64,000 bases of DNA from Stylophora pistillata (lineage: Eukaryota). Where the stretch lies: assembly GCF_002571385.2 (NCBI RefSeq), contig NW_019217828.1, positions 727,204-791,203 of the forward strand. Reading direction: 5' to 3'. The translations under genes and the position numbers were made by a program. This document shows, piece by piece, positions 214 through 63,648 of this stretch (its first letter is position 1; each line of letters begins with the position of its first letter). The notes beneath the pieces are model-generated. The model did not search any database. It was not told the DNA's origin and saw only the letters and a list, made by a program, of their open reading frames with translations.

Positions 214-539
214 CACATCGTTGCTCTTGTATCGGTACATAGTCCAGTGCGTTCCATCTTGACTGTACGTCACTTGGTATCTTGTTACCCATTGGTTAGT
301 ATCCTGTCGACCTTTTGTGACTATTTTCTTGATTTTCATTGGTCGACCAAAGTCAACTTTAAGCCACTGATGGTGATTGTTGTGTCGTGCGCTCCAGGCC
401 CCCATGTACCGACCTCGTTTGACGGTCCCTAGCCTGGACAGTCTGGCATTGTGGTATTTGTTCCACTCTGAAGAAGCTGTGATTTGCTTATTCCTAATAG
501 CGCCACTCTTCATACCCAAGGCTTTGTTACAAACAGCAG
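214..539 (-). CDS. FA58C D37 class E, exon a (gene continues beyond the window)
   Basis: 326 nt; CNKALGMKSGAI..YKSNDV. Confidence 0.88.
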
Positions 540-2961
540 CTATATAAAAACCATATACGTAAAAATATAAACATTTTGGAAAAAACAACAACGAAGAAAA
601 ATCAGTGAGTTCAAAACTCCCACATTTCCCCCCCCCCCCTCATTAAAAAGTCCGTCTGAAAACTAGCAAGTCCCGGTGGGGGAGTACATAGGTTAGCAGC
701 ACTGCTTACGGTAGACGGATTTTCTTACACGTGCAAATGCAAAACAAACTAGCAAATAAAAAAAAGAAAACTGATTAAAGTGTATCTGACCGCTGTGTAC
801 ATAATCTTTTGTTGACGGAAGCTTCAAAACTTTATCCCTATTAATCTTACGCGTGTTTCTTCAAATACCTGAGCATCCATACAATTCGATTCTCATCGAT
901 ATCCAACTGTACCAGGTCTTTGGGTAAACTCTGACATAGACAGCAGGAAGTCTCTTATTGAATCTATGATACACTAGTGAGTGGCGGTCTGTATTGGCTG
1001 TGAATAACTTTAACAAACAAAAATACATGTTATTGTGTAAAAACGTTTCTCACGGTCTCAATAACGAGTATAGTCAAACTGTATTTAGCAATTGGTAATA
1101 TGACCGTTACCTACAGTATAATTGTCGGATTCGTTTGGAATTTCTTAACCTTCACAGCCAAGGATCAGTACGAATATTCTCCATACTGTTCGCTATACAT
1201 TTTCTGAGGTTGACAAGGAGAATTTGCTTAACAATCAAGAACTTCTTTAGTCAGTGATCATTTCCGTTGACCTTAATGGGTGATATTGTCAAAGGGTTAA
1301 AAAGTTATGGAATCCGCTCAAAACCCTTGTGCACCTATTTCGAAAACTTGAATGACCAAAGACTTCTGAAACCCTTTCAAATAAATGAATACCTCTGTGA
1401 GCGTAATTCAGGGAATTTTCCTTCAAAATTCAAGTACCACGCATACCGAGAGACAAGTTCAATACTTTTCGCGGGAAACAAGTTCAACTATATAGGGATC
1501 CGATCTTTACCGATTTCCTTTCTAAAAACAAATAAAAACAAGTCCTCAAAATAGGTCTGTCACCCAAATTATTCTTTCTCGTCCCTTAACCCTTTAACTC
1601 ACATGAATCACCAAGACAGAATTTCTCCTCACAATTTCGATACGATATCAAGCAGACAAATGATGAGCAGAAAAATATCAATAAGGGAATCATTAGTTGA
1701 TCCAATACCAAATTCTTCAGAGTAACATCACTAAAATTGTATGATTGACAGTAAGGAGAATTGCTGACAAGATCCTGGTAGTGAAAGGGTTAAACGCCAA
1801 TATAAAGTAAAAATACGTCATCATTTACCTTCACTCTCCCATTCTCTTTATACTGAGCGAAATCCACCCCATTCATTCCATACGCCACAGTATAACTCTT
1901 CACCCATTGATTTGCATCCTGTCGGCCTTGGGATCCGATGCCTCTCACACGATAGATTTCCACCATATTAACCTGGAGCCATTGCTTGTTGTTACGGTGT
2001 CGTACGCTCCATGACCACCGGTGATTTAGTCTTCCATGCCACGGTGCGAGGTGATGATTGTAATATGATGAGGCAGAAAATTGGCCATTTGGGATTCTCT
2101 TGTCTTCCAAACCAAGAGGAGCACCACATGAGTCTAGGAATCAAAAGACGAAAAAAAAAGAGGACCAAAGGAGAATCCAAAAGAAACCTTATGGCCAGTA
2201 GATTTACTTTAATTTGAAGGTTTTTTTCTATCCCATTATTGGTTCAAATTCAACGACGTTACCTTTTCAAGATGTCGACTAAGGTAGAAAAAAACTTATT
2301 TTGCAAGGAAGAACTTCGAAGAAAATAATCGATAAGGAGGTCTGATTAAAAAAAAAACTATAAATGACACAAAGTAGAAAAGGTTAACATCCTTGTCACC
2401 GCGTTAATTATCAGGAAGAAATTACGTAGTCGTATCATCGGTACGTAAAAAGCAGCTTTTGAAAAGTTCACGTTTAATCATTAACCCTTTGTCAGAGCAA
2501 AGAATCGTGATCAATCAATCCTCAGAATAAGTATCACAAAGTTTCTAATTTTATTGCGCTTTTGTGTAAAAAGCGCTCACCACTGACAGAGATTTGGACT
2601 ACAATAGCTATTTCAGAGCTCCCTTGACTAAACAACAGTACCTTCTGGGCATCCAAAGAACTCCACTCTCATAGAAATATGTCTGTGCCAACCCCAAGGA
2701 CGAATGCGCACAAACCGAGCTTTGATTGGTGGAAACAGACGATATTGCACAACGCTATTCTGATCCCTGTTTCCTGTAAAATACTGCGAAAATAACATCA
2801 ATAGTCAATATTTTGCTTCAATACTCAGAATTTTGCAATTTTAAGGAAAGGGGACTGCTTAAAATAATGCATGTTCAATCAAAACAAATCCATCAACTCT
2901 AATACACTCATCAAAGATATATAACTCACGGAATCAAATTCCACCATACTAGTTCGCCTCC

Positions 2962-2995
<34 letters not shown>

Positions 2996-5900
2996 TAACA
3001 ATGATAATAATGTTTATTCAAACCTTTTGCAAAGAATGCTGAATTACAGGTTGATAAATTATGTTAACAAGAAATATGGGAGAAAAAAGGGGAAAAACTG
3101 TACAAAATTCATTAAGCTACATACAAGTAAAACAGCATCTACATAATAATAATAATACTAAATGATAATAAAAAAACCAGGAAAGATTTATTACTCGACG
3201 TTTCGGGGTCATCGTGACTCCATTATCAAGAGACTAGTTTAAAAAACATGCAAATAAGGAAAGGTACAAGAATAGCATAAATTAGACTGAACGGCTTAAA
3301 CAAACACCTTGGCGCGGATGGAATCCGTTTGCACGTTCAGTGTTGGCTTACGCATGCGAATATACAACATTTCATTAACAAGGCAATCAAATTTGCCGTT
3401 ACATTTCGTGATGACGTTGAATTGCTCGATCAAGCGTTCAGGCATTTCACTATTGTGCTGGAGGTGGTAGTGTTTGTAGATAGAAGATGATTTCCTTGTG
3501 TGCCCTTCTACGCGCTCGTGTAAGTGACCACGAGTATAGCCCACATACCCTGCATCACACAGGTTACATTTAAATTCATAAACGACACATTGTTGGTTAA
3601 CAATAGGGGGCTTAATTTCGTGTTGCTTAAGCTGTTGATCGAGCTTAGGGCTAACGAACACTGGTTGGACAGTCACGCTTAACTTCGAGCTTNNNNNNNN
3701 NNNNNNNNNNNNNNNNNNNNNNNNNNNNNNNNNNNNNNNNNNNNNNNNNNNNNNNNNNNNNNNNNNNNNNNNNNNNNNNNNNNNNNNNNNNNNNNNNNNN
3801 NNNNNNNNNNNNNNNNNNNNNNNNNNNNNNNNNNNNNNNNNNNNNNNNNNNNNNNNNNNNNNNNNNNNNNNNNNNNNNNNNNNNNNNNNNNNNNNNNNNN
3901 NNNNNNNNNNNNNNNNNNNNNNNNNNNNNNNNNNNNNNNNNNNNNNNNNNNNNNNNNNNNNNNNNNNNNNNNNNNNNNNNNNNNNNNNNNNNNNNNNNNN
4001 NNNNNNNNNNNNNNNNNNNNNNNNNNNNNNNNNNNNNNNNNNNNNNNNNNNNNNNNNNNNNNNNNNNNNNNNNNNNNNNNNNNNNNNNNNNNNNNNNNNN
4101 NNNNNNNNNNNNNNNNNNNNNNNNNNNNNNNNNNNNNNNNNNNNNNNNNNNNNNNNNNNNNNNNNNNNNNNNNNNNNNNNNNNNNNNNNNNNNNNNNNNN
4201 NNNNNNNNNNNNNNNNNNNNNNNNNNNNNNNNNNNNNNNNNNNNNNNNNNNNNNNNNNNNNNNNNNNNNNNNNNNNNNNNNNNNNNNNNNNNNNNNNNNN
4301 NNNNNNNNNNNNNNNNNNNNNNNNNNNNNNNNNNNNNNNNNNNNNNNNNNNNNNNGGGAATGTCTAGTTGTCATTATGAATACGACTTATAAAGGATTCA
4401 CAGGCAGCACTACAGCGTGCATCAAGGGTTTCAATACCGGCTAGCATTAGGGTATCTGAGTACGAATGACCTGGCCAAATAATGGTGAGAGCACGCCTCT
4501 GCACTGACTCTAGGGTCTTATATAAGTAAGACGGTAAATTGGCAAATGCAGTAGAGGCGTACTCAAGTATGGAATATATTAGGCAGCAATAGATGTAGAC
4601 GATATCTTCCGCTGGGACAGAACTTCTCCTGAGCTGCCTTAAAACAAACAACCGCCTGTTAGCCTTCTTCAGCAAATAGTCAACATGCGTCCCCCCGGAA
4701 AGGTCATTGGACAAGTTGACGCCTAGCAGCTTGAACGACGAGACCTCTTCGATAACAGCGCCCCTCGATACGACAGGGGGCGCCTTGTAACTATTATACT
4801 GAAGGAAGCCAACAGTCATGCACTGACATTTAGTAGGATTAAGGTGCATGTTATTGGTGTTAACAAAATTTTGAATGTCTTTCACAAGGAAGTTACGCAC
4901 AGAAGGAGAATTTCTTGGCAGAATTTCCATGATGGTTAAGTCATCAACAAACTTGATACGCAAGCCCCCGGAAGACATCAGGTCATTAACCATGCAAGCA
5001 AACAAAATAGGCCCTAAACGGGTACCCTGTGGTATCCCGCCGCACAAAGCTTGGGAACTAGAACTGACCGTACCTTATCGATACAGTCGTCCCGAATCTT
5101 CCGATTCGTTTCCCTAAGGCAAAACCTCTTCTTTTTCCGAAGAATCTGACATACTCGCATCTCTACTAGGACTGTTAACATTCCCTTTTCCTTACTTAAG
5201 GGCCAAGTGGATGAGCACGTGCTGTCGTAAGCGACGAGTTGAAGACTTTGGGGCGAACTTGTTTTAATTGATGGAGCGAACTCCTCAAGATTGGGTGGGA
5301 GGGGCGGGGGAGGGGGTAGCTGGTAGAATTAGTAAGCTACTATAAAACAACGCACAGACTTCACTTGAAATTTGCAGGACCTGCAACAGAGCTACCCACT
5401 TTTCTCCGAGACAGAAAGATACCTACAAAATTTATAACACCTGATCTGTCCATTACCTTTCTGTTGCTATTTTCCTTGTATTCAGTGAACGTAGAACCGT
5501 CTTGGCTGTACTCTACAAAGTATTGCGTGACCCACTGTGCAGCATCCTGTCTACCTTGCGTGGATATCTTCACCACGCGCATGGCACGATAAAAGTCTAC
5601 CGCAAGCCACTGGTAGCGGGTGTTGTGCCTGGCACACCAGGCTCCCATACGAGAACCTGTGCGGCGGAAGTGTAGCCGGGCATTGCGAGGACCATGATTG
5701 ACATCCCAGCTCGAGGAGGCTGATAGTTGGGTTTGCCGGATGCGGCCATTTTGCATACCGAGTGGTTTGTCGCATCTTGGGCCTAACAGAGGAAAATTTC
5801 AGGAATGAGGAGACTACACATAATAGGGAAACATACACGCATCTGTTCTCCAATTTCTTTCTGACTTTTTCCTGACTTTTCCTTGGTAGAAATCAAAATT

Positions 5901-57500: not shown

Positions 57501-60500
57501 CAGATTTCCGATTTTGGCCACTAGTGGCAGATTTCCGATTTTGGCCACTAGTGGCCGATTTGCGATTTTGGACAGTATTGGCAGATTTCCCATTTTGGCC
57601 AGTATTGGCAGATTTCTTATTTTGGCCAGTATTGGCAGATTTCCCATTTTGGACAGTATTGGCAGATTTCCCATTTTGGACAGTATTGGCAGATTTCTTA
57701 TTTTGGCCAGTATTGGCAGATTTCCCATTTTGGCCAGTAGTTGCCGATTTGGGATTTTGGCCACTCGTGGTCGATTTGGGATTTTGGCCAGTAGCGGCAC
57801 ATTTCCGATTTTGGCTATCTTTTATCTTTTATTTAAGTGACGGATGGCTTACGCTTCAAGGATATGATGATCGTGAATAAACATTCGTGATGGTATGTAC
57901 GCCGAACGAATCAGTAGAGCGTGAAATCTCACTGTATGGCAATCAGACTTCATTTGAATGTTCTTCTTTATTTACGACGCGTGCGAGCGCTGCTTTTGCT
58001 TTCTAGAGGTGAAAGAAACTCGTCTTTACTCTACTTTTGAACGCAGTAGTTTTAAAAAGAATTTGGCTACGGATCTTAATCGTGACTAATTTAATATTCA
58101 TGACAAAATTGGGATCAGAGTAAACGTCCGGATAATCTAGGTTCGACTGTATTAATATTACAGAATTATTGCAGATCATATATTTACAAAGAAATTGTTC
58201 CCTACCTGCGCGACATCCATAAAACTCGACTCTCATAGAAATGTGGCTTCTCCATCCCCTCGGGTGTAAACGAATGTAACGCGCTAAAATAGGTGGGTTG
58301 ATAGCTTGCGTGACTACGCTGTTGCGATCGCGGTTTCCTTGAAAGAACTGAAAGGGAAAATTTGATAATAACGTTGAGTGAAAAGGTTAGCAAAGAGGCG
58401 ATGGTATCATAATATTCAAGAAAACAGAGGATCAAATTCTTTGTAGGAAGCTAACGTCCAAAGACTGATCTTTTTAGTGGTCACGTTACTTGTGTTATGT
58501 TATGTTTGTCATATTGAGGAAACACCTTAAACTCGTCAGGCAAAAGATTTCATCTGTGTGTATTGTGAAAGGAGACTTAAGGTGCTTGTTGGAGATTATA
58601 AAGTTCAGTTTGTTGGTCAGGTGAATTCAAAGCCATGACTATCCAGTTAACTTTGAAGGTAACGTATGTGTATCTGTCAAAGTGAGGTATGGTCTCGTTG
58701 GCAGCCCCTGTTTGCTCGTGTTGTGCAATGCACTTTCTTCCTTGAGAAACCATGATGCGTGACAGTCACAGAATATCATACCGCGGTGAGCTCTCCAAAG
58801 ATGCATGACAGTCACAGAATATCATAACGCGGTGAGCTATCCCAAGTTGCAAGCGATAACTCTACAAATGACTCCTAAATCGTGTGTCTTACCTTATCCT
58901 GACTGTTAATCCTATGAATCTGCCAGTGAATTCCATCCAAGCTGGAGGAAAGTTGATAACGCGTTACCCACTGGTCAGCGTCCTGTCGGCCTTGAGTGTC
59001 CACTTTAGTGATTTTCATTGGTCGAGAGAAGTCAAACTTGATCCATTGGTTGTGATTGTTATGTCTTGAGCACCAGGCTCCCACATAACTTCCATGCCGT
59101 ACTCGACCCAGTCTTCCAAGCCAAGCCGCGTGGTATTTGTTGTATTCTGAAGATGCGGTGATCTTGGAGTTCGGTAGTTTTCTAACCAATGGGCTGCTGC
59201 ACGAAAATACTGCAAAACAGAAACGTGAAGCATGGAGAATGATACCGTTTTTTACATTAAAAAGACCGAGATTTACGTGCTCAAATAAAATTAGGCGACA
59301 AATAATAAAAGAATGTCAACATTTCGATAGAATATGTTTCATTTCATAGCAAGAGTTTTGTTGAGTCAAATCTTCTATGGTATATTTTCATGCTTTTTCA
59401 GTTATATAGAGAAAAAAATGTCATAAAAACTCATTGGTAAGTGTCAAAACTCTTGAAAATGTTGAAATAGGATCGGTACATAGGGTAATCAAGAACTGCT
59501 GAGTGGTTGAGGAAGTGAACCAGGAACGATAAAAATTTTATCTAAACATGGACGTTATTGAAGGGTAGAAGCAGTCAATTAATTAATCAGTCCGTCAAAC
59601 AATCAATCAATCAATCATTCCATCGATCAATCAGTCAATCAATCAGTCAATCAATCGATCTATCAGTCCATCAATCAATCATCAATCTGTATATTAGTCT
59701 TTGTTCTTGTCTGCCTATCTGTCTGTCGATCGGTGAATAAATCAATCACTTCGTCCAGGACCAATAGTGAAACATTTTCGTTCCTCTCCTTCGTAAACAC
59801 TCTCGAAACACGAACTCTAACATACCATAACAGCCGTATATCTCTGCTCTCATCGAAATCCAGCCGTACCAACGTCTTGGATAAATACGAACATACACGG
59901 CGTTGAACTGCTTCACAAAATCGTGGTACACAATCGAGTGCCTGTTGCTGTTTCCGGTGAACACCTGTCAGGAACAAGAATATTGAAATTCAAAAGAAAT
60001 GATTGGAGAGCAATCGCAGTGACCAAGACAGTTAGCAGGATTTCCATACGCAATAGGCCTTTCACTCTGGTGTATCTGTTTAACAAATATATTCCATGTT
60101 GTCGTGGGTATGTTTAGTGATAGATCAACAATGACGTTAACATCTGCTAAAAACAAAAAAGTGGCACAGTGTGCCCCAGATGTTTGGAATACTCTTACCT
60201 TGGTTCCCCTCCCTTCAGAGTAATAGCGGAAGTTGGTTGAATCCGGACTGTAGGACACAATATACCTTGTCACCCATTGATTAGCATTCTGTCTTCCCTG
60301 GGTAGCAATCCCTGTCGCCCTGACCACACCCACAAAGCTCACTTGGAACCACTGGTTGTGGTTGTTGGTCCTAGCACTCCATGACCAGCGATGGTTTAAC
60401 CGGCCATGCCAGGGGGACAGATTATGATTGTAATATGTAGACGCCGATAAAAGGCCATTGGTGATACGTTTGTCTTCCAAACCAAGAGGAAGTGAGCAAC

Positions 60501-63500
60501 GTCCTTACATTAAAAAAAAAAAATAGAAATAATAAACAGAAAATGAAATGTAAGAAATCATAAAGGCAAAAATGAGGAATAGAATATACTGATGGCAAGG
60601 GAAAGGGCGGGTAAAAATAGCATGAGCCAGTCAACATCAGGTATTGGCTCATCAATAAGGTTATTTCCTAGAAATAAAGGTTGTTCTCGGACCTTTTTAA
60701 ATTTTCCCTGATTCTTCCCCACAATACAGTGTAAAACTTATTTTCTATGAATCTTCAAATAAATTTCACTATATGACCAATTTCACACATACCCCACCCC
60801 TAACCTAAAAAAGTCAACAAATAACAAGTTAGGATTAAGTCGGTTTAAGGGAGGGGTAGGTGCGCAGCTGCTCAGACACTGACATTCATCTGAAGTTTCC
60901 ATGACAGGTAATCTTAGTTTTGAATCATGCGCGTCCTAATTAAAGGATTTTGCGAGTACTGTTGTGCGCAGAACAGGATGAGCCATGCAACACCAAGGAG
61001 TCATAGCATTAAAGTTTACTTTTCAGTTTGATTTTAATAAGGACGAGATCAAACCTGCAGAACACCCATACAGCTCCACTCTCATAGAGATATGTCTGTA
61101 CCAGCCCCAAGGATGGACACGTAGAAAGCGCGCTCTGATTTGCGGAAATAAACGATTTTGTACCACACTGTTTTGGTCTCTATTACCCACAAGGTACTGG
61201 GAAAATAAGAATGAAGATATGGTTAACTTCTGTGAATTCTTAAGCTTAAAAACACTGTAGGATATTCTTCTCACAAAGTTATTTTAAAGCTTAAAAGTTT
61301 TCATTAGAGAATGGCTTTATGCGTGCATGACGAACGCCATGGTTCATTAAAATAACGCAAAAGTATTGTCTCCACACTTACTTTCCGGTTGCTGTTATGT
61401 TTAAACTCCGCGAAGTGCGCGCCATCTTGACTGTAGCTAAGATAATACTGAGTGACCCATTGAGCGGCATCTTGTCTTCCCTGAGTGGCGATTTTTACCA
61501 ATCTTACTGCGCGGTAAAAATCGATCTGAAACCACTGGTACCGTGTGTTATGTCGAGCACACCAGGCCCCCACTCGATGGCCAATGCGGCGAAGGTGAAG
61601 CCTGCCATTGTTAGGCACGTGATTTCCGTCCCAGCTAGAGGACGCGGATAGCTGTGCTGCTTTTATGCGACCATTTTGCATTCCCAGAGGTTGGTTACAT
61701 CGCTTTCCTGTAAATTGCGATATAAACTTAATGTAGAGCTAAAAGTTTTCATTTAGAATGTTACCTTAAGTTCTTAACACTTGTGTTTTTTACAGACAAG
61801 TTAACCAGGTCAGAAATATAAATTCCCTTGATCCGTTAAAATTAGGACCAGCTATCAAAATCTACACCACTCAATCTAGTTTAACCTTTCAAATGATATT
61901 CTACATGTAATTTGTGATCTCGGGGTCTCAAAATAAGTTAAGTCTACCCTTTCATACGATATTTCAAACTAAGGTGATTCAAACTTCGGTGATCACTTCC
62001 ATGTCTCTCATTCCCTTTCTGTAAAACGTTGCCAGACTTGAAAATTCAACTCAGTAAGAGCGCGGTTACCTGGACACTTCTCATGTCAAGTTTTATAGAT
62101 CAAGGACCTTCGCTGCTTTAGTGAAATCTTACCGTAGACACATCCATAGAACTCGACCCTCAAGCCAATCCAAGAATACCAAGAAACAGGGTAAACTCTG
62201 AAGTATTTGCCATGGAGTACCCGGGCAAACCTATTTTGCACGATGATGTATCTGTCATAGTTTCCACGGAAAATCTATAAAACAAGAAAGACAAATGAAA
62301 TGTTCATGACGATTGAACTAATAAAAGAATCTGTTCGATCGGTAAGGACTATTATGGCGATCTCCTAAAAGTTCTGAAATGACTCTTTCATCAAGACAGA
62401 CGAGCCATAGTGCTTCATATTCCCTCTCCTTGGAACGAGCGATCTCGAACCGTATGAGAATCAGGGCAAAATTTGGAGATGGGAGTTTTGACATCACATC
62501 AGTAAGTAAAACATACCTTTGTGGTTCTACCCTCGCGATATGGAACAAATCCAGTTCTAGTTCTTGAATATTTGATGTAATATTTCTTCACCCAGTAATT
62601 GGCATTCTGCATTCCCTGGGTAGCGACACGTGTCACTTTCGCCATAGCCTGGAAATCAACCTGCAGCCACCTTTGTCCGTCATTTCTACGCGGTGACCAT
62701 CCTCCACCAAAACGGCTGTAACGCCGCCTGTTGAGTCGGGCGTTCCACGGCGCGTCGTAAATATTGTTGTACGAAGAAGCAGTCATCACTGGGTCAGGAA
62801 CTCGGCCGTCTTCGAGACCGAGTGGCATATCACAATGATCTAGAAGGAAAACCGTAAAAATTACAGAAATACGTCAAACATTTGTCACTTGCTTGGGATA
62901 AATAAAACTCTTGCTCAGCCAGCAATTTAATCGACCGTGCTAAGCCGAAGGCTCATAGAATAAGTTCACATGCCACCAGTGTTCTGGATTTTACAAGGAT
63001 TTCAAGCGTCTTGATGGTCGTTAAACAAAGAAAAGTGCACATAAAAAAATATAAAGGTAAAGACTGATGATAAGCAAGGGTGAGCAGAAAATACTTAAAC
63101 GGTTACAGAGAGCTTTTTCTTTGGTCGGGTGACTAAACAAAATAGAAATTCACACATTGTTTTGGTTTTGTAAAAGAGAAGTTAAATTTTACTTCTCTTT
63201 GGCTTGGAAATTCTTTGGAGGAATAGCAAGTCAGTAACGACAACAAAAACAAATCCACCATCCGAAATGTGAAAGGTCCAATCAGAGGGCGAAGTATCAT
63301 GACTTTGCTGGAATAGGGACGTGGAGCCAGAAGGCTACGATGAAACACAAGGAGTCGTATCACCACTGAATGCGAATTTGTGTCAACCCCAAGCTAAGAT
63401 TTAATTCGAGTTTTCGTTGAGCCTTCATTCCAGGATTCTAGTTATTCAGGGGGTTTCTCAAAAACAGCTTCCTATAATTCTTTAAAATGTAGAGAGCCCC

Positions 63501-63648
63501 ACTTACTCCATGGACATCCGTAAAGCTCCATCCTCATGGAAATATGTGACCACCAGCCTCGTGGTTGGATACGAACGAAGCGGGCGTAAATGGCTGGCTT
63601 GAAAGCGTGCGTGCGTAGAGAATATCTGTCGACGTTTCCTGGGAATTG
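214..63648 (-). CDS. Giant multi-exon poly-FA58C (discoidin/F5-8 type C) protein, partial at both ends; 72 exons, ~5,570 aa in window, 8-domain super-repeat
   Basis: All exons read by hand with AG/GT boundaries and compatible phases (a exons 3n+2, b exons 3n+1). FA58C hallmarks in every unit: C..PLG, TASS, AW, QWLQVD, ATQGR, QWV..Y, F.GN.D, RY.RI.P..W, MRVE.YGC. Confidence 0.9.
869..1007 (-). CDS. FA58C D36 class D, exon b
   Basis: 139 nt; LFTANTDRHS..ELYGCS. Confidence 0.9.
1587..1793. mobile_element. MITE with TTAACCCTTT...AAAGGGTTAA ends (piggyBac-like TTAA termini)
   Basis: Terminal inverted repeats; related copy at 12271-12471. Confidence 0.55.
1829..2133 (-). CDS. FA58C D36 class D, exon a
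   Basis: 305 nt; YYNHHLAPWHG..ENGRVK. Confidence 0.9.
2642..2783 (-). CDS. FA58C D35 class C, exon b
   Basis: 142 nt; YFTGNRDQNS..EFFGCPE. Confidence 0.9.
3190..3692 (-). mobile_element. Penelope-like retroelement 3' fragment: GIY-YIG endonuclease plus a hammerhead-like motif
   Basis: VVYEFKCNLCDAGYVGYTRGHLHER..H..IYKH..E..KPTLN is the PLE-type GIY-YIG pattern; runs into an N gap. Confidence 0.8.
3693..4355. other. Assembly gap
   Basis: N run. Confidence 1.
4356..5060 (-). mobile_element. Non-LTR retrotransposon (LINE) reverse transcriptase, C-terminal fragment
   Basis: GIPQGTRLGPILF, IKFVDDLT, LNPTKC, FKLLGV, LESVQRRA; 5' truncated. Confidence 0.85.
5457..5782 (-). CDS. FA58C D35 class C, exon a
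   Basis: 326 nt; CDKPLGMQNGRI..ENSNRK. Confidence 0.9.
6060..6201 (-). CDS. FA58C D34 class B, exon b
   Basis: 142 nt; IFAGNYDRY..EFYGCVI. Confidence 0.9.
6902..7224 (-). CDS. FA58C D34 class B, exon a
   Basis: 323 nt; RCDVPLGVEDGR..FYNYYC..EGRRTK (absent from the ORF track). Confidence 0.9.
7607..7748 (-). CDS. FA58C D33 class A, exon b
   Basis: 142 nt; TFPANQDRYS..ELYGCPW. Confidence 0.9.
8479..8807 (-). CDS. FA58C D33 class A, exon a
   Basis: 329 nt; VCDRPLGMQSGRI..DWWDVVK. Confidence 0.9.
8923..9067 (-). CDS. FA58C D32 class H, exon b
   Basis: 145 nt; RFRGNYDIYHT..ELYGCRYK (weak GAG acceptor). Confidence 0.85.
9250..9385. repeat. Degenerate ~16-17-bp tandem repeat (ATAACGAACYTCCGT-like)
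   Basis: Repeated AACGAAC cores. Confidence 0.55.
9532..9854 (-). CDS. FA58C D32 class H, exon a
   Basis: 323 nt; RCTMPLGMEDRR..GGRLK. Confidence 0.9.
10014..10396. mobile_element. TIR element/MITE with an internal coding relic
   Basis: Imperfect TIRs ACCGTAAAyCCTCTAwTAA; internal TAATAAGCCCCCC repeats. Confidence 0.6.
10667..10808 (-). CDS. FA58C D31 class G, exon b
   Basis: 142 nt; YFTGNRDRNS..EFYGCFT. Confidence 0.9.
11471..11796 (-). CDS. FA58C D31 class G, exon a
   Basis: 326 nt; CNQPMGLQIGRLKNHLM..ERNNRK. Confidence 0.9.
11979..12120 (-). CDS. FA58C D30 class F, exon b
   Basis: 142 nt; IFQANIERYF..ELYGCRL. Confidence 0.9.
12271..12471. mobile_element. MITE, same family as 1587-1793
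   Basis: TAACCCTTT...AAAGGGTTAA ends; shared internal ACCAAGACAGAATTTCT. Confidence 0.55.
12507..12679. repeat. 11-bp minisatellite (TTTGCCTCGAG)n, ~15 copies
   Basis: Direct inspection. Confidence 0.95.
12878..13200 (-). CDS. FA58C D30 class F, exon a
   Basis: 323 nt; MHNHYYGPWSARLQA..EGRKIR. Confidence 0.9.
13334..13475 (-). CDS. FA58C D29 class E, exon b
   Basis: 142 nt; TFRGNYDQNS..EIYGCRA. Confidence 0.9.
13966..14291 (-). CDS. FA58C D29 class E, exon a
   Basis: 326 nt; CSTPLGLQNGRI..FKNNDM. Confidence 0.9.
14550..14688 (-). CDS. FA58C D28 class D, exon b
   Basis: 139 nt; VFSGNSDRHS..ELFGCT. Confidence 0.9.
15282..15586 (-). CDS. FA58C D28 class D, exon a
   Basis: 305 nt; YYNHHLSPWHG..ENKRIK. 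Confidence 0.9.
15699..15771. repeat. 35-bp perfect tandem duplication
   Basis: ACTCTGCCTCACCCCTTCCATGACAGTAGCGCCAG twice. Confidence 0.9.
15937..16200. repeat. Degenerate (GACA)n microsatellite
   Basis: Direct inspection. Confidence 0.9.
16315..16456 (-). CDS. FA58C D27 class C, exon b
   Basis: 142 nt; YFKGNRDQNT..EFYGCVE. Confidence 0.9.
16847..17172 (-). CDS. FA58C D27 class C, exon a
   Basis: 326 nt; MKNGRIHANQI..ENSNRK. Confidence 0.9.
17508..17649 (-). CDS. FA58C D26 class B, exon b
   Basis: 142 nt; IFPGNFDRY..ELYGCVI. Confidence 0.9.
18306..18628 (-). CDS. FA58C D26 class B, exon a
   Basis: 323 nt; YYNYWGSPRMG..EYGRTK. Confidence 0.9.
19120..19261 (-). CDS. FA58C D25 class A, exon b
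   Basis: 142 nt; TFRGNYDRN..EVYGGAW. Confidence 0.9.
19943..20271 (-). CDS. FA58C D25 class A, exon a
   Basis: 329 nt; FCDRVQGLQRGAI..YWWDVIK. Confidence 0.9.
20679..20823 (-). CDS. FA58C D24 class H, exon b
   Basis: 145 nt; VFRGNYDIYHT..ELYGCRYK. Confidence 0.9.
21202..21524 (-). CDS. FA58C D24 class H, exon a
   Basis: 323 nt; CTMPLGMEDRR..YGKVK. Confidence 0.9.
21636..21777 (-). CDS. FA58C D23 class G, exon b
   Basis: 142 nt; YFTGNRDQNT..EFYGCLT. Confidence 0.9.
22146..22471 (-). CDS. FA58C D23 class G, exon a
   Basis: 326 nt; CNRPMGLQNNRLKNHLM..ERNSIK. Confidence 0.9.
22760..22850 (+). mobile_element. Short PLE-type non-autonomous insertion with a minimal hammerhead-like motif
   Basis: CCGACGAAGGGCTAACGCTCGAAACGTCAGC; flanked by direct repeats TACYTTGGAGTCCC (22748-22761, 22848-22861). 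Confidence 0.6.
23016..23087 (-). mobile_element. tRNA-derived SINE head
   Basis: Reverse strand has A-box TAGCTCAATG and B-box GGGTTCAAGCTCC but no complete cloverleaf. Confidence 0.5.
23088..23164. repeat. 21-bp tandem repeat, ~3.5 copies
   Basis: TTCTGAGGTTTCCGCGGGATA. Confidence 0.85.
23314..23455 (-). CDS. FA58C D22 class F, exon b
   Basis: 142 nt; LFQGNTERYF..ELYGCRL. Confidence 0.9.
24015..24337 (-). CDS. FA58C D22 class F, exon a
   Basis: 323 nt; MYNHYYGPWCARLQA..QARRTR. Confidence 0.9.
24778..24959 (-). mobile_element. Same family, longer copy with hammerhead-like motif at 24896-24929, truncated by the N gap
   Basis: Highly similar to the copies at 43061 and 48272. Confidence 0.6.
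24960..25509. other. Assembly gap
   Basis: N run. Confidence 1.
25633..25774 (-). CDS. FA58C D21 class E, exon b
   Basis: 142 nt; LFQANRDQNT..EFYGCPV. Confidence 0.9.
26094..26419 (-). CDS. FA58C D21 class E, exon a
   Basis: 326 nt; CNRALGMQNGRI..FRSSNK. Confidence 0.9.
26983..27121 (-). CDS. FA58C D20 class D, exon b
   Basis: 139 nt; IFTANTDRHS..EFYGCP. Confidence 0.9.
27361..27665 (-). CDS. FA58C D20 class D, exon a
   Basis: 305 nt; YYNHHLSPWHG..ENRGVK. Confidence 0.9.
28132..28273 (-). CDS. FA58C D19 class C, exon b
   Basis: 142 nt; YFTGNRDQNS..EFYGCTE. Confidence 0.9.
30413..30692. mobile_element. MITE with imperfect long terminal inverted repeats
   Basis: AGTCCCTCCTTTTCGG at the left end versus CCGAAAAGGAGGGAGT at the right end. 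Confidence 0.45.
31596..32750 (+). CDS. Intronless rhodopsin-class (class A) GPCR, peptide-receptor-like orphan, nested antisense in the host intron
   Basis: 7 hydrophobic segments; GN (TM1), NMAASD (TM2), CK and IAIDRF (TM3), W (TM4), INPVIC (TM7); first ATG at 31596. Confidence 0.9.
   Translation: MSFPQNTTLLQVLDVIRHDRQQKNCSYQDLPTEVENFKLFMYCCLLLGSLCGNIFIIIIVYKTRDLQKTVNYFIVNMAASDLVSPLVLLPIEIVSMATGSTKSRWYTDGTFGSITCKFINFIAPVSFLVSSQSFVWIAIDRFIAVVLPVRLGLVSRKTRVIAIASTWILAAAISSNHLVSQELHIRDNNSFCGVTLTSTATEGAYFVILLWVQLFINTFGSLFLSPVLYTAMAASLHKQSKALANSGQNIQQNIFKKRKRAIQLSAVTMVTYYLVVTIPVLSHLLYIEVLRFPCIIMKLVGFMGDLCYYGSTVINPVICLSFVQRYRQGLRIILCYCLRKRREKTPNQKQTIQREINSPSGANYRNRRNYNVSAHNEETLDTAL
33330..33493 (+). 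pseudogene. GPCR C-terminal tail relic
   Basis: KRSNVTAKLERISLKEMKNLRGEN resembles the tail of the 38-kb relic; downstream DNA resembles the 3' flank of GPCR2 (~35636-35690). Confidence 0.4.
34387..35433 (+). CDS. Second intronless class A GPCR, tandem paralogue; C-terminal tail cut by TAA at 35431
   Basis: Same motifs (GNIF, NMALSD, IAIDRF, INPF); coding and upstream sequence homologous to the first GPCR. Confidence 0.85.
   Translation: MLLQQNTTQDPDGSKHNHQQTNCSYQELPAAVDNFKLFMYCSVLLCSLCGNIFIIIIVYKHKDLHKTVNYFIVNMALSDLVFPLAWLPVQIVGNANGSISEYWHVGGIFGSITCKFIYFVAHVSVHVSSQSFVWIAIDRFVAFLFPVRLGLISRKIRFIAIASTWSLAAAFNFTFLLGQDLHIEVNHTFCKRTAFISISGQKDFAIYDWFQSIFFYFVPLCLTTLLYTAITAALRKQSKALANSGPNIQRNVFEKRKRAIRLSVVTMVTYFLSVSPAMIVRLHLNKVLPLSCTMFEVLMITGEICYYLSTTINPFIFLSFVQSYRRGLSNILSLCFWKRRNETANKGK
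36456..36722. repeat. 48-bp near-perfect tandem repeat, ~5.5 copies
   Basis: AATCGACATTCAAGCTCAAAATCATCACCTATGTTAGTCTATTGACAC. Confidence 0.95.
37973..38211 (+). pseudogene. GPCR TM7 and C-tail relic
   Basis: YASTVVNLSICLPFVQSYRQGFRNIL matches TM7/helix 8 of the intact paralogues; ends VDTAF* in a shifted frame; no TM1-6. Confidence 0.7.
38861..39186 (-). CDS. FA58C D19 class C, exon a
   Basis: 326 nt; CDKPLGLKNGRI..ENSNRK; followed by a 10.6-kb intron. Confidence 0.9.
39284..39425 (-). CDS. FA58C D18 class B, exon b
   Basis: 142 nt; IFQGNYDRY..EFYGCVV. Confidence 0.9.
39825..40147 (-). CDS. FA58C D18 class B, exon a
   Basis: 323 nt; FYNYYCSPFNG..EGRRTK. Confidence 0.9.
40289..40430 (-). 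CDS. FA58C D17 class A, exon b
   Basis: 142 nt; TFQGNRDRLS..ELYGAPW. Confidence 0.9.
40761..40863. repeat. 21-bp tandem repeat, ~4 copies
   Basis: AAATCTCTTTAGTTTATTGTA. Confidence 0.8.
41127..41455 (-). CDS. FA58C D17 class A, exon a
   Basis: 329 nt; RFYDSPLGLQNNRI..HWWNYVK (Cys replaced by Tyr). Confidence 0.9.
41724..41868 (-). CDS. FA58C D16 class H, exon b
   Basis: 145 nt; VFRGNYDIYHT..ELYGCRLR. Confidence 0.9.
42227..42549 (-). CDS. FA58C D16 class H, exon a
   Basis: 323 nt; YNYNHGPDRARL..YGRVK. Confidence 0.9.
42648..42789 (-). CDS. FA58C D15 class G, exon b
   Basis: 142 nt; YFTGNRDQNT..EFYGCVT. Confidence 0.9.
43061..43234. mobile_element. Same family, fold-back copy with a 12-bp target-site duplication
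   Basis: Inverted arms 43126-43176 and 43184-43234; GGATATTTTTTT on both flanks. Confidence 0.6.
43430..43570. mobile_element. Hairpin-forming interspersed repeat (partial copy at ~22930-23005)
   Basis: GGTCTGTATGGGAGAATCTTGACC and GGTCAAGATTCTCCCATACAGACC are inverted arms. Confidence 0.55.
43894..44219 (-). CDS. FA58C D15 class G, exon a
   Basis: 326 nt; CNRPLGMQTGRI..ERNSIK. Confidence 0.9.
44391..44532 (-). CDS. FA58C D14 class F, exon b
   Basis: 142 nt; IFQGNTERYY..ELYGCRL. Confidence 0.9.
45007..45329 (-). CDS. FA58C D14 class F, exon a
   Basis: 323 nt; RCDVPLGIRDGR..QGRRVK. Confidence 0.9.
45839..45980 (-). CDS. FA58C D13 class E, exon b
   Basis: 142 nt; LFQANRDQNS..EYYGCVA. Confidence 0.9.
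46555..46880 (-). CDS. FA58C D13 class E, exon a
   Basis: 326 nt; CNKPLGLQNHR..FRSAYK. Confidence 0.9.
46984..47122 (-). CDS. FA58C D12 class D, exon b
   Basis: 139 nt; IFNGNTDRHS..EVYGCS. Confidence 0.9.
47643..47947 (-). CDS. FA58C D12 class D, exon a
   Basis: 305 nt; YYNHHLSPWHG..EGRTTK. Confidence 0.9.
48272..48529. mobile_element. Same family, palindromic copy with two opposed hammerhead-like motifs
   Basis: 91-bp inverted arms 48330-48420 and 48439-48529; flanked by (TACA)n. Confidence 0.6.
48837..48978 (-). CDS. FA58C D11 class C, exon b
   Basis: 142 nt; YFQGNRDQNS..EFYGCAE. Confidence 0.9.
49061..49133 (+). tRNA. tRNA-Met(CAT), elongator-type copy, possibly a pseudogene (T1:T72 mismatch)
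   Basis: TCCTCGTTAGCGCAGAAGGCAGCGCGTCAGTCTCATAATCTGAAGGTCGTGAGTTCGATCCTCACACGGGGTA; anticodon loop CTCATAA; GTTCGA T-loop; TTTT follows. Confidence 0.85.
49729..50054 (-). CDS. FA58C D11 class C, exon a
   Basis: 326 nt; MQNGRIRAHQL..ENSNRK. Confidence 0.9.
50442..50583 (-). CDS. FA58C D10 class B, exon b
   Basis: 142 nt; IFPGNYDQH..ELYGCVV. Confidence 0.9.
50981..51303 (-). CDS. FA58C D10 class B, exon a
   Basis: 323 nt; RCDMPLGIEDKR..VGGRTK. Confidence 0.9.
51789..51930 (-). CDS. FA58C D9 class A, exon b
   Basis: 142 nt; TFQGNRDQLS..ELYGSPW. Confidence 0.9.
52708..53039 (-). CDS. FA58C D9 class A, exon a
   Basis: 332 nt; FCDAPVGLQSGRI..YWWNYAPR. Confidence 0.9.
53131..53275 (-). CDS. 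FA58C D8 class H, exon b
   Basis: 145 nt; MFRGNFDIYHT..ELYGGRLR (Cys replaced by Gly). Confidence 0.9.
54007..54329 (-). CDS. FA58C D8 class H, exon a
   Basis: 323 nt; DRFTMPLGMEDRR..FGRVK (N-terminal Cys replaced by Phe). Confidence 0.9.
54754..54895 (-). CDS. FA58C D7 class G, exon b
   Basis: 142 nt; YFSGNHDRNT..EFYGCRI. Confidence 0.9.
55218..55543 (-). CDS. FA58C D7 class G, exon a
   Basis: 326 nt; MGLQSGRLKNHM..ERNSRK. Confidence 0.9.
55820..55961 (-). CDS. FA58C D6 class F, exon b
   Basis: 142 nt; VFQGNIER..ELYGCRL. Confidence 0.9.
56062..56384 (-). CDS. FA58C D6 class F, exon a
   Basis: 323 nt; MYNHYYGPWSARLQA..HGRNVK. Confidence 0.9.
56525..57815. repeat. 27-bp minisatellite, ~47 units, consensus TTTTGGCCACTAGTGGCAGATTTCCSA
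   Basis: Direct inspection; gives 9-aa periodic ORFs on both strands. Confidence 0.95.
58206..58347 (-). CDS. FA58C D5 class E, exon b
   Basis: 142 nt; FFQGNRDRNS..EFYGCRA. Confidence 0.9.
58893..59209 (-). CDS. FA58C D5 class E, exon a
   Basis: 317 nt (3 codons shorter than other E copies); SSEYNKYH..NSQDK. Confidence 0.85.
59575..59745. repeat. Degenerate (TCAA)n/(TCTG)n microsatellite
   Basis: Direct inspection. Confidence 0.8.
59826..59964 (-). CDS. FA58C D4 class D, exon b
   Basis: 139 nt; VFTGNSNRHS..EIYGCY. Confidence 0.9.
60199..60503 (-). CDS. FA58C D4 class D, exon a
   Basis: 305 nt; YYNHNLSPWHGRLN..EGRGTK. Confidence 0.9.
61055..61196 (-). CDS. FA58C D3 class C, exon b
   Basis: 142 nt; YLVGNRDQNS..ELYGCSA. 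Confidence 0.9.
61382..61707 (-). CDS. FA58C D3 class C, exon a
   Basis: 326 nt; CNQPLGMQNGRI..HNSNRK. Confidence 0.9.
62133..62274 (-). CDS. FA58C D2 class B, exon b
   Basis: 142 nt; IFRGNYDRY..EFYGCVY. Confidence 0.9.
62517..62839 (-). CDS. FA58C D2 class B, exon a
   Basis: 323 nt; HCDMPLGLEDGR..REGRTTK; AG/GT. Confidence 0.9.
63507..63648 (-). CDS. FA58C D1 class A, exon b
   Basis: 142 nt; QFPGNVDRYS..ELYGCPW; AG/GT. Confidence 0.9.

What the first reader, a model, noticed from the sequence alone, without database searches (positions are those of the whole stretch)
214..63648. Giant protein built only of discoidin (FA58C) domains in a strict 8-domain super-repeat
Seen: 72 exons join in frame into 35 complete and 2 half FA58C domains (~5,570 aa). 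No other domain type appears, and no start or stop codon of the spliced frame lies in the window. The domains cycle A-B-C-D-E-F-G-H for ~4.5 turns. Class signatures: A ..WW(D/N); B aromatic YNYY-type loop, GG.W and QN; C WCARHN..NSNRK; D YYNHHLSPWHG with a shorter loop; E SSE.N..H..RLG; F M.NHYYGPWSARLQA; G RLKNH..ERN; H YNYNHGP and DIYHT. Each class has fixed exon lengths (A 329/142, B 323/142, C 326/142, D 305/139, E 326/142, F 323/142, G 326/142, H 323/145; 3,717 nt per cycle; only D5 and D9 deviate), while introns are unrelated between cycles. Known: FA58C normally occurs as 1-2 copies (factor V/VIII, MFGE8, EDIL3, neuropilins, DDR), and super-repeats are typical of ruler/filament proteins such as titin and nebulin. 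Inference: a possibly undescribed, probably extracellular, periodic polyvalent filament or lattice protein. I do not recognise it as a characterised gene.
Basis: partly seen in the sequence, partly recalled or inferred. Interest (0 to 1): 0.92.

Follow-up and report, generated by a model that had tools for sequence, protein, structure and literature searches.

The report
Giant coral protein of repeated discoidin domains
The window holds the middle of one very large, strongly conserved coral gene whose protein is a chain of at least 63 (perhaps 75) discoidin lectin-type domains ordered in a strict eight-domain cycle; nothing like it has been characterised, and its function is still only inferred.

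Summary
On the minus strand, 72 GT-AG exons join into 16,707 nt (5,569 codons) with no stop, giving 35 whole and 2 half F5/8-type-C domains. A tree puts them in eight clades by position mod 8. Both N gaps lie in introns and do not break the cycle.

The window holds only part of the gene. In the same contig the array has 63 domains. Before it lies a carbohydrate-binding-module-like domain. After it come VWD and EGF exons, 12 cysteine-less discoidin domains with a period of four, and a VWA domain. Splice phases chain through all of these. Three other assemblies hold the same exons in the same order, each domain closest to its positional partner. dN/dS is 0.07-0.14 at dS about 1.

My best reading is one giant secreted, strongly basic, multivalent binding or matrix protein of about 10,600-12,800 aa.

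Weak points:
- The first exon is unresolved.
- This assembly has an in-frame TAG before the second block.
- Function is inferred only.

Predicted proteins with 12-19 discoidin domains exist, so "1-2 copies" is outdated. The scan noted other discoidin arrays elsewhere in this genome.

The parts
63507..63648 (-). Window domain 1 (gene domain 7), class A: short exon only (second half of the domain; its long exon lies beyond the window at w 64524-64844)
62133..62839 (-). Domain 2, class B: long exon 62517-62839 (323), short exon 62133-62274 (142)
61055..61707 (-). Domain 3, class C: 61382-61707 (326), 61055-61196 (142)
59826..60503 (-). Domain 4, class D: 60199-60503 (305), 59826-59964 (139)
58206..59209 (-). 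Domain 5, class E: 58893-59209 (317, deviant length), 58206-58347 (142)
55820..56384 (-). Domain 6, class F: 56062-56384 (323), 55820-55961 (142)
54754..55543 (-). Domain 7, class G: 55218-55543 (326), 54754-54895 (142)
53131..54329 (-). Domain 8, class H: 54007-54329 (323), 53131-53275 (145)
51789..53039 (-). Domain 9, class A: 52708-53039 (332, deviant length), 51789-51930 (142)
50442..51303 (-). Domain 10, class B: 50981-51303 (323), 50442-50583 (142)
48837..50054 (-). Domain 11, class C: 49729-50054 (326), 48837-48978 (142)
46984..47947 (-). Domain 12, class D: 47643-47947 (305), 46984-47122 (139)
45839..46880 (-). Domain 13, class E: 46555-46880 (326), 45839-45980 (142)
44391..45329 (-). 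Domain 14, class F: 45007-45329 (323), 44391-44532 (142)
42648..44219 (-). Domain 15, class G: 43894-44219 (326), 42648-42789 (142)
41724..42549 (-). Domain 16, class H: 42227-42549 (323), 41724-41868 (145)
40289..41455 (-). Domain 17, class A: 41127-41455 (329), 40289-40430 (142)
39284..40147 (-). Domain 18, class B: 39825-40147 (323), 39284-39425 (142)
28132..39186 (-). Domain 19, class C: 38861-39186 (326), 28132-28273 (142). The two exons are split by a 10,587-nt intron that holds two GPCR ORFs on the other strand.
26983..27665 (-). Domain 20, class D: 27361-27665 (305), 26983-27121 (139)
25633..26419 (-). Domain 21, class E: 26094-26419 (326), 25633-25774 (142). The N gap 24960-25509 lies in the intron that follows.
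23314..24337 (-). Domain 22, class F: 24015-24337 (323), 23314-23455 (142)
21636..22471 (-). Domain 23, class G: 22146-22471 (326), 21636-21777 (142)
20679..21524 (-). Domain 24, class H: 21202-21524 (323), 20679-20823 (145)
19120..20271 (-). Domain 25, class A: 19943-20271 (329), 19120-19261 (142)
17508..18628 (-). Domain 26, class B: 18306-18628 (323), 17508-17649 (142)
16315..17172 (-). Domain 27, class C: 16847-17172 (326), 16315-16456 (142)
14550..15586 (-). Domain 28, class D: 15282-15586 (305), 14550-14688 (139)
13334..14291 (-). Domain 29, class E: 13966-14291 (326), 13334-13475 (142)
11979..13200 (-). Domain 30, class F: 12878-13200 (323), 11979-12120 (142)
10667..11796 (-). Domain 31, class G: 11471-11796 (326), 10667-10808 (142)
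8923..9854 (-). Domain 32, class H: 9532-9854 (323), 8923-9067 (145)
7607..8807 (-). Domain 33, class A: 8479-8807 (329), 7607-7748 (142)
6060..7224 (-). Domain 34, class B: 6902-7224 (323), 6060-6201 (142)
2642..5782 (-). Domain 35, class C: 5457-5782 (326), 2642-2783 (142). The intron between them holds the N gap 3693-4355.
869..2133 (-). Domain 36, class D: 1829-2133 (305), 869-1007 (139)
214..539 (-). Domain 37 (gene domain 43), class E: long exon only; its short exon straddles the window's low end (about w 68 to -74)

Best explanation
The window is the central 64 kb of one giant protein-coding gene of a cnidarian, most likely a stony coral. The gene lies on the minus strand of contig C45. 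Coordinates written w are relative to the window.

Gene order as read (shown):
1. A candidate signal-peptide exon (w 80770-80718).
2. A two-exon N-terminal jelly-roll domain of the carbohydrate-binding-module type.
3. 63 F5/8-type-C (discoidin) domains in the order C-D-E-F-G-H, then seven turns of A-H, then A. Each domain is a long exon plus a short exon, entered and left in phase 1.
4. About 790 aa of bridge exons that carry a VWD domain and one EGF.
5. 12 more discoidin domains that lack the canonical cysteines, arranged in a four-domain cycle.
6. A VWA domain.

In this assembly an in-frame TAG in bridge exon X10 would end the protein after about 10,600 aa. Read through, as in the related species, it would reach about 12,800 aa. 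Both lengths are estimates.

History (inferred from the tree): one domain became an odd/even pair, the pair grew to an 8-domain unit, and the unit was then amplified. The copies have since been kept apart. Each domain is conserved as an individual under strong purifying selection.

Mechanism (inferred):
- It is a secreted, very basic, bead-on-a-string protein with linkers of only 4-5 residues.
- It presents eight conserved variants of the discoidin ligand-binding loops over and over.
- It would therefore act as a long multivalent binder and cross-linker of anionic glycans, lipids or matrix, in mucus, extracellular matrix, an adhesive or a surface coat.
- VWD and VWA would give multimerisation or matrix anchorage.
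For: Single gene:
- 72 in-window exons are all GT-AG and give 0 stops in 5,569 codons.
- Every domain module is phase 1-1. Inter-domain introns are short (median 397 nt). The one long intron (10.6 kb) lies inside a domain, so a transcript must span it.
- No start, stop or signal-peptide exon lies inside the array.

Extent:
- 75 discoidin domains lie on one strand over about 132 kb.
- The period of 8 holds through block 1: identity is 64/62/60% at lags 8/16/24, against 41-49% at other lags. Block 2 has period 4: 55% against 46%.

Junctions:
- The last N-terminal-domain exon ends with one extra base followed by GTAAGT. The first discoidin exon accepts in phase 1. Both species get Lys at the junction.
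- The last block-1 exon keeps its phase-1 donor. Exon X1 accepts in phase 1 (G+AT = Asp) in both species, and X1 has no ATG or signal peptide.
- X1 to X11 chain in phase into domain 64.
- Domain 75 keeps a phase-1 donor, and VWA ORFs follow.

Selection and age:
- Other assemblies carry the same exons in the same order (L025, L026, L027/L028).
- Every L025 long exon, and 9 of its 10 short exons, matches its positional partner best (80-96%), above the same-class paralogues.
- Omega is 0.068 (window), 0.081 (end of block 1), 0.14 (bridge) and 0.105 (block 2), at dS 0.8-1.4.

Secreted binder:
- The closest solved structure is factor V C2, at E 4.5e-22.
- Class-specific residues sit in the stretch that aligns with the C2 loop regions.
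- K+R is 909 against D+E 306, and there are only 2 N-x-S/T sequons in 5,569 aa.
- Relatives of the N-terminal domain are small proteins with hydrophobic N-termini.
- The N-terminal domain model matches CBM35, CBM6 and MAM folds, but weakly.
Against:
- No multi-domain orthologous fragment turned up among 1.84 billion representative proteins. Expression is therefore unproven.
- NCBI models the Acropora palmata counterpart of the N-terminal domain as a separate 205-aa protein that reads through the donor.
- The candidate first exon ends in phase 2, but the next known exon accepts in phase 1. At least one exon is missing from my model.
- X10 has an in-frame TAG in this assembly.
- All modules are phase-symmetric, so shorter isoforms are possible.
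- Ligand, location and assembly state are pure inference.
- The N-terminal domain fold match is weak (TM 0.3-0.44, model pLDDT 65.7).
Confidence: 0.72

Rival explanations
1. There are two or three neighbouring genes rather than one. These would be a small secreted N-terminal-domain protein, a gene with 63 discoidin domains plus VWD and EGF that ends at the TAG in X10, and a separate gene with 12 discoidin domains plus VWA.
For: - A. palmata LOC141866648 is annotated as a 205-aa stand-alone protein.
- At least 65 stand-alone paralogues of the N-terminal domain exist in this genome.
- X10 has a TAG in this assembly.
- Block 2 differs in period, in cysteines and in clade.
Against: - The donor after the N-terminal domain and the phase-1 acceptor of domain 1 are conserved in two species. 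The read-through stop is not conserved.
- No ATG or signal-peptide exon lies before domain 1, X1 or domain 64. X11 feeds domain 64 in phase in both species.
- The codon is TAT in the related species, and the exon is still 92% conserved after the TAG.
- Block 2 has omega 0.105.
Confidence: 0.2
2. The array is a cassette system. Alternative splicing of the phase-symmetric domain modules gives many shorter proteins of varied domain content, and the full-length product is rare or absent.
For: - Every domain is an exon pair whose length is a multiple of 3 and whose phases are 1-1. Any set of whole domains can be skipped in frame.
- X10 is phase 0-0 and could also be skipped.
Against: - Every domain is individually conserved, and all splice sites are canonical.
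- I have no data on isoforms. This reading is compatible with the main one.
Confidence: 0.25
3. The array is a decaying pseudogene array or an assembly artefact of a shorter repeat.
For: - The assembly has gaps in and near the locus.
- One in-frame TAG lies outside the window.
- No expression evidence exists.
Against: - Omega is 0.07-0.14 and there are no stops in 5,569 codons.
- Same-class copies are only 60-69% identical and their introns are unrelated, so the array is not a collapsed or duplicated assembly.
- Independent assemblies have the same positional order.
Confidence: 0.03

Closest known systems
Sea-urchin Nectin (Paracentrotus lividus; PMC10057474)
   Same: It is a secreted protein made of tandem FA58C domains. 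It is an extracellular adhesive and cohesive matrix protein. Single domains of a 984-aa six-domain hit are 46-51% identical to some domains here. I did not look up that hit's name.
   Different: Nectin has six domains, no other module and no super-repeat. This gene has 63+12 domains with periods of 8 and 4, plus an N-terminal CBM-like domain, VWD, EGF and VWA.
Predicted, uncharacterised cnidarian multi-discoidin proteins: Nematostella LOC5504709 (14 FA58C only) and LOC5512761 (TSP1 x2, 15 FA58C, VWA x2); Pocillopora verrucosa XP_066029356 (6 EGF + 12 FA58C); Acropora millepora LOC114977630 (8 FA58C + 6 EGF)
   Same: They have long runs of FA58C with matrix modules. LOC5512761 also ends in VWA and is the best named match of most domains here.
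   Different: Identity is only 37-54%, so they are paralogues and not orthologues. They are four to five times shorter. A super-repeat was not examined in them. None has been studied.
C1/C2 domains of coagulation factors V and VIII, and lactadherin
   Same: They are the closest solved structures (E 1e-22 to 1e-11). The framework residues and the terminal cysteine pair are the same. They bind anionic membranes through loops plus basic residues.
   Different: Those proteins have two copies per protein. The binding loops here are replaced by eight class-specific versions. Membrane binding was not tested.
Super-repeat giant proteins (titin, nebulin)
   Same: There is a higher-order repeat: modules a fixed number of positions apart are more alike than neighbours are. 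The central units are the youngest.
   Different: The fold is unrelated, those proteins are intracellular, and here no periodic partner is known. This is an analogy only.
[quoted passage not shown]
   Same: The bridge region has a VWD followed by an EGF. The orthologous ORF in L027/L028 carries a weak precomputed Vwde (PF26129) hit.
   Different: Only one EGF was found. My own Pfam scan did not reproduce the Vwde hit. VWDE has no discoidin arrays.

Membership tests
F5/8 type C (discoidin) domain, Pfam PF00754 | Profile match above the curated cut-off | tested here: met
   Long exons alone score 48-67 bits against a cut-off of 28.2. All 36 long and 36 short exons were recovered by the iterated profile.
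F5/8 type C (discoidin) domain, Pfam PF00754 | Cysteine pair at the N- and C-terminal ends of the domain | tested here: met
   The pair is present in nearly all block-1 domains. Exceptions are gene domains 14 and 23 (both missing) and 15 and 31 (C-terminal missing). It is absent from all 12 block-2 domains.
F5/8 type C (discoidin) domain, Pfam PF00754 | Beta-sandwich fold with protruding binding loops | not tested
   A domain is split over two exons. The only support is the sequence alignment to factor V C2.
Nectin-type all-discoidin adhesive proteins | A signal peptide followed by six FA58C domains and nothing else | tested here: not met
   There are 63+12 domains, and other modules are present.
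Nectin-type all-discoidin adhesive proteins | Adhesive or cohesive function in a secretion | not testable with these tools
   No expression or proteome data could be reached.
VWDE | VWD domain | tested here: met
   PF00094 at E 5e-7 on exon X7. The GDPHY start motif is in X4.
VWDE | Run of several EGF repeats after the VWD | tested here: not met
   One teneurin-type EGF (X9) is followed by X10, X11 and discoidin domains.
Super-repeat filament or ruler proteins (an analogy, not a family) | Modules most similar at a fixed lag greater than 1 | tested here: met
   Lag 8 gives 64-69%, against 41-49% at other lags. The eight clades were confirmed.
Super-repeat filament or ruler proteins (an analogy, not a family) | Super-repeat matches the period of a partner polymer | not testable with these tools
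   No partner is known.

The most novel reading that the evidence does not exclude
The eight-domain cycle is a structural register. With 4-5-residue linkers the chain would form a regular rod or ribbon whose eight distinct loop faces recur at a fixed spacing. That spacing would match a periodic extracellular partner, such as a fibrillar collagen, chitin-like or sulfated glycan fibres, arrays of acidic skeletal-matrix proteins, or its own lateral packing. The protein would then be an extracellular counterpart of nebulin or titin, a molecular ruler or template, in a basal animal.
Probability: 0.15. Interest if true: 0.9.

Novelty: new variant of a known kind. Interest (0 to 1): 0.74.

Why it matters
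If it is made as one chain, this would be among the largest extracellular proteins known. It would also hold by far the longest run of discoidin domains I found: 63 to 75, against six in the best-studied case. Super-repeats are otherwise associated with intracellular filament proteins.

Each domain's position has been held under strong selection across species at dS about 1. That points to position-specific roles rather than simple bulk. The gene therefore offers a natural system for three questions:
- how long modular arrays stay stable without being homogenised;
- what eight loop variants of one lectin-type fold recognise;
- how corals build mucus, matrix or adhesive layers.

It also shows that current gene models probably fragment this locus.

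Tried and rejected
RNA evidence:
No transcript evidence exists in this report.

Joined spliced model:
- It was not sent to any search or folding tool.
- Searches were exon by exon, by reference.
- Joining was done only inside scripts, for the frame check, composition and trees. No sequence was printed.
- A search or fold of the whole spliced protein, or of an 8-domain unit, was left out.

Looking for an annotated giant orthologue:
- A phmmer search of a class B exon against 1.84 billion representatives found none. The best hits have 12-19 domains at 37-48% identity.
- None of 11 large hits is closer than 54% to any domain here.
- The look-up of encoding contigs for the A. palmata protein returned nothing.

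Domain searches that gave nothing:
- Pfam finds nothing for the N-terminal domain, X1, X3 or X8.
- The DUF4980 lead and the HpiC1-like lead are weak.
- Foldseek gives only weak CBM and MAM-type matches.

Other points:
- The 5' end is not solved. The conserved candidate exon has the wrong phase for direct joining.
- Long ORFs at 56631-57840 on both strands are a 27-bp minisatellite, not genes.
- A consistent unpaired cysteine in class A was considered and rejected. Cysteine loss is sporadic, not class-wide.
- No second copy of X10 exists in the assembly against which to check the TAG.
- Literature searches found no description of this gene.

Full report
COORDINATES. The window is G000:C45:727204-791203, plus strand. 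Coordinates written w are window-relative and continue outside the window (w = contig position minus 727203). The gene is on the minus strand. GC is 40%, and N runs lie at 3693-4355, 23015 and 24960-25509.

1. THE OBSERVATION

Exons. Long minus-strand ORFs hit Pfam F5_F8_type_C at E 1e-12 to 3e-18. An iterated profile search over all stop-to-stop ORFs found 36 long pieces (first part of the domain) and 36 short pieces (last part), strictly alternating. The anchored ends show a conserved acceptor just before the codon of the N-terminal cysteine and a conserved AAG|GTA donor. I picked sites by frame, pyrimidine tract and donor consensus. That gives 72 exons, all AG..GT, totalling 16,707 nt or 5,569 codons with no stop.

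Exon lengths.

Periodicity. A maximum-likelihood tree of the 35 whole domains gives eight clades identical to position mod 8. Support is 91-100, and the tree needs 7 label changes, the minimum, against a shuffled mean of 25.2. Above that sits a 100/100 split between odd classes (A, C, E, G) and even classes (B, D, F, H). Mean identity in the window by lag is 69% at lag 8, 66% at lag 16 and 64% at lag 24. Other even lags give 47-49% and odd lags 41%.

Introns. Only 9 of 2,485 intron pairs share any similarity, and none of them sit at equivalent positions of the cycle.

Gaps (the check the scan's program asked for first). Gap 3693-4355 is inside the intron that splits window domain 35. The short exon beyond it is 70-72% identical to class C short exons and 41-60% to the others, so both halves belong to one class C domain. 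Gap 24960-25509 is in the intron between an E and an F domain, which is the expected order. The single N at 23015 is also intronic.

Verdict: confirmed.

2. WHAT LIES AROUND IT

I fetched 220 kb of flanking contig. The same profiles find 75 discoidin domains, all on the minus strand, and none in the next 100 kb on the low-coordinate side or the 49 kb fetched on the high-coordinate side.

Block 1 has 63 domains, from w 74880 to -28482.
- The order is C-D-E-F-G-H, then seven turns of A-H, then A.
- The period of 8 holds throughout, with the end copies more divergent. Identity is 64/62/60% at lags 8/16/24.
- Central turns are the most alike. Examples are gene domains 16 and 24, 17 and 25, and 18 and 26.
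- Outside the window six long exons carry an extra intron. The one in domain 5 is conserved in another species.

Block 2 has 12 domains, from w -39901 to -57508.
- The cycle has four domains: 55% identity at lag 4 against 46%.
- All fall in the odd superclade.
- All lack both canonical cysteines.
- The exon design is the same: long plus short, phase 1-1.

5' side.
- Two exons (w 76322-75971 and 75400-75246) encode a domain with no Pfam match.
- Its relatives are small proteins of 170-224 aa. They come from corals (Stylophora, Orbicella, Porites; A. palmata at 76%) and, at 52-56% identity, from Deltaproteobacteria MAGs.
- A model built on the A. palmata relative is a beta sandwich (pLDDT 65.7). 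Its only matches are weak ones to CBM35, CBM6, CBM4, gingipain adhesin and MAM domains.
- The last of these two exons ends with one extra base and GTAAGT. The first discoidin exon accepts in phase 1. The same holds in locus L026 of another assembly, and both give Lys at the junction. The read-through stop seen in our sequence is not conserved there.
- This genome has at least 65 copies of this domain in other clusters, but none next to another discoidin cluster.
- A block conserved between the species 4.4 kb further upstream holds an ATG, a hydrophobic stretch and a GTAAGT donor (w 80770-80718). It ends in phase 2, while the next exon needs phase 1. A small exon is probably missing, so the 5' end is not settled.

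3' side of block 1.
- The last short exon keeps the usual phase-1 donor.
- Loci L027 and L028, from a third assembly, are collinear with gene domains 56-63 and then with eleven further conserved blocks.
- Read in both species, these blocks are exons X1 to X11 with chained phases.
- X1 (w -29088 to -29314) accepts in phase 1 (G+AT = Asp) and has no ATG or signal peptide.
- X4 to X7 are a VWD domain (GDPHY motif; Pfam E 5e-7). X9 is a teneurin-type EGF. X11 ends in phase 1 and feeds domain 64.
- An intact Harbinger-type transposase ORF with a THAP domain lies in the X11-to-domain-64 intron and is absent from L028.
- After domain 75, which again keeps a phase-1 donor, two ORFs encode a VWA domain (E 5e-11 and 8e-14).

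One flaw. In this assembly X10 has TAG at w -36467 to -36469, where L028 has TAT. The 50 codons after it are still 92% conserved. The assembly holds no second copy to compare.

3. SELECTION AND AGE

- Locus L025, from another assembly, carries gene domains 11-20 in the same order. Each long exon, and 9 of the 10 short exons, is closest to its positional partner here (80-96%), above same-class paralogues.
- Over 4,281 aligned nt, dN is 0.078 and dS is 1.15, so omega is 0.068.
- Against L027/L028, omega is 0.081 (end of block 1), 0.14 (bridge) and 0.105 (block 2).
- The array is therefore old, is not homogenised, and each domain is kept as an individual. This rules out a pseudogene array or an assembly artefact.

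4. ONE GENE OR SEVERAL?

For one gene:
- All elements lie on a single strand.
- Phases run unbroken through more than 160 exons.
- No start or terminal exon lies inside the array.
- The 10.6-kb intron is inside a domain.
- Junctions are conserved in two species at all three seams.

Against:
- There is no RNA evidence.
- NCBI models the A. palmata N-terminal domain as a separate protein.
- X10 carries the TAG.
- The first exon is unresolved.
- No multi-domain orthologous fragment exists in the representative library.

My estimates are about 0.72 for one gene covering at least the N-terminal domain, block 1 and the VWD/EGF part, and about 0.5 that block 2 and the VWA belong to the same product in this animal.

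5. HOW IT MAY WORK (inference)

- The nearest solved structures are the membrane-binding C2 domains of factors V and VIII, lactadherin and neuropilin b domains.
- The framework is invariant in all classes. The class signatures fall mainly in the stretch after the ASS motif and around the following glycine-rich turn. In the alignment to factor V C2 these correspond to the loop regions that bind ligand. The assignment of loops rests on my knowledge of the C2 structures.
- The in-window product is extremely basic: K+R 909 against D+E 306. It has only 2 N-x-S/T sequons in 5,569 residues. I did not compute an expected number of sequons.
- Linkers between the last cysteine of one domain and the first of the next are 4-5 residues.
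- Together with VWD, EGF and VWA, this fits a long, stiff, secreted chain. It would bind and cross-link anionic partners many times over.
- Place and ligand are unknown. Discoidin proteins have been listed as candidate pattern-recognition molecules in corals (PMC2291459) and as matrix and adhesive components (PMC8086859, PMC10057474).

6. COMPARISON AND NOVELTY

- The closest characterised protein is sea-urchin Nectin: a signal peptide plus six FA58C domains, adhesive.
- Predicted but unstudied proteins with 8-19 FA58C exist in Nematostella, Pocillopora, Acropora and amphioxus. All are 54% identical or less to any domain here.
- I found no description of a discoidin super-repeat or of this gene.
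- Earlier notes of this scan report other discoidin arrays elsewhere in this genome: a 14-domain protein and a period-3 repeat. A genome-wide scan shows further large clusters, one spanning about 170 kb on C15.
- I class the finding as a new variant of a known kind: a multi-discoidin matrix protein, but giant, with strict periods of 8 and 4 and a new domain combination.

LIMITS. The protein lengths of 10,600 and 12,800 aa are estimates from exon sizes.

Noticed in passing
window 31572-32750 (+) and 34363-35433 (+): Two intronless rhodopsin-type GPCR ORFs (392 and 356 aa; 7tm_1 at E 1e-29 and 3e-34) are nested on the opposite strand. They lie inside the 10.6-kb intron that splits window domain 19.
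   Followed up: partly
window 56526-57815: A 27-bp minisatellite of about 48 copies lies in an intron. It creates spurious ORFs of about 390 aa on both strands, with chance Pfam hits.
   Followed up: yes
L012:3531-3533 (w -36467 to -36469; contig C45 690734-690736): Conserved bridge exon X10 has an in-frame TAG where the related assembly (L028) has TAT. The exon remains 92% conserved after it. It may be a real truncation, one allele, or an error.
   Followed up: partly
L012:439-1956 (-): An intact 506-aa Harbinger/PIF-type transposase ORF (THAP + HTH_Tnp_4 + DDE_Tnp_4) sits in the intron before the second discoidin block. It is absent at the same place in L028.
   Followed up: partly
L004:1908-2333 (-) and genome clusters on C396, C18, C175, C443, C77, C101: The N-terminal domain belongs to a family with at least 65 copies in this genome, mostly in tandem clusters of small genes. 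Proteins 52-56% identical occur in Deltaproteobacteria MAGs. This suggests transfer between bacteria and corals, or contamination of the MAGs.
   Followed up: partly
G000:C15:852830-1024344 (+); also C15:684790-708909 (-), C50:640009-660334, C269, C94, C1181: There are other dense clusters of discoidin exons, one spanning about 170 kb. The genome has at least 1,221 candidate PF00754 exon matches, so further giant arrays may exist.
   Followed up: no
gene domains 14, 15, 23, 31 (window domains 8, 9, 17, 25): These domains have lost one or both of the canonical terminal cysteines. Classes C and E often carry a third cysteine, and class B two extra ones, in the loop region.
   Followed up: partly
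w about -28800 to -29080 (L011), and L027 about 13100-13370: A (CTGA)n-type microsatellite sits at the same place in both species, in the intron after the last block-1 exon.
   Followed up: no
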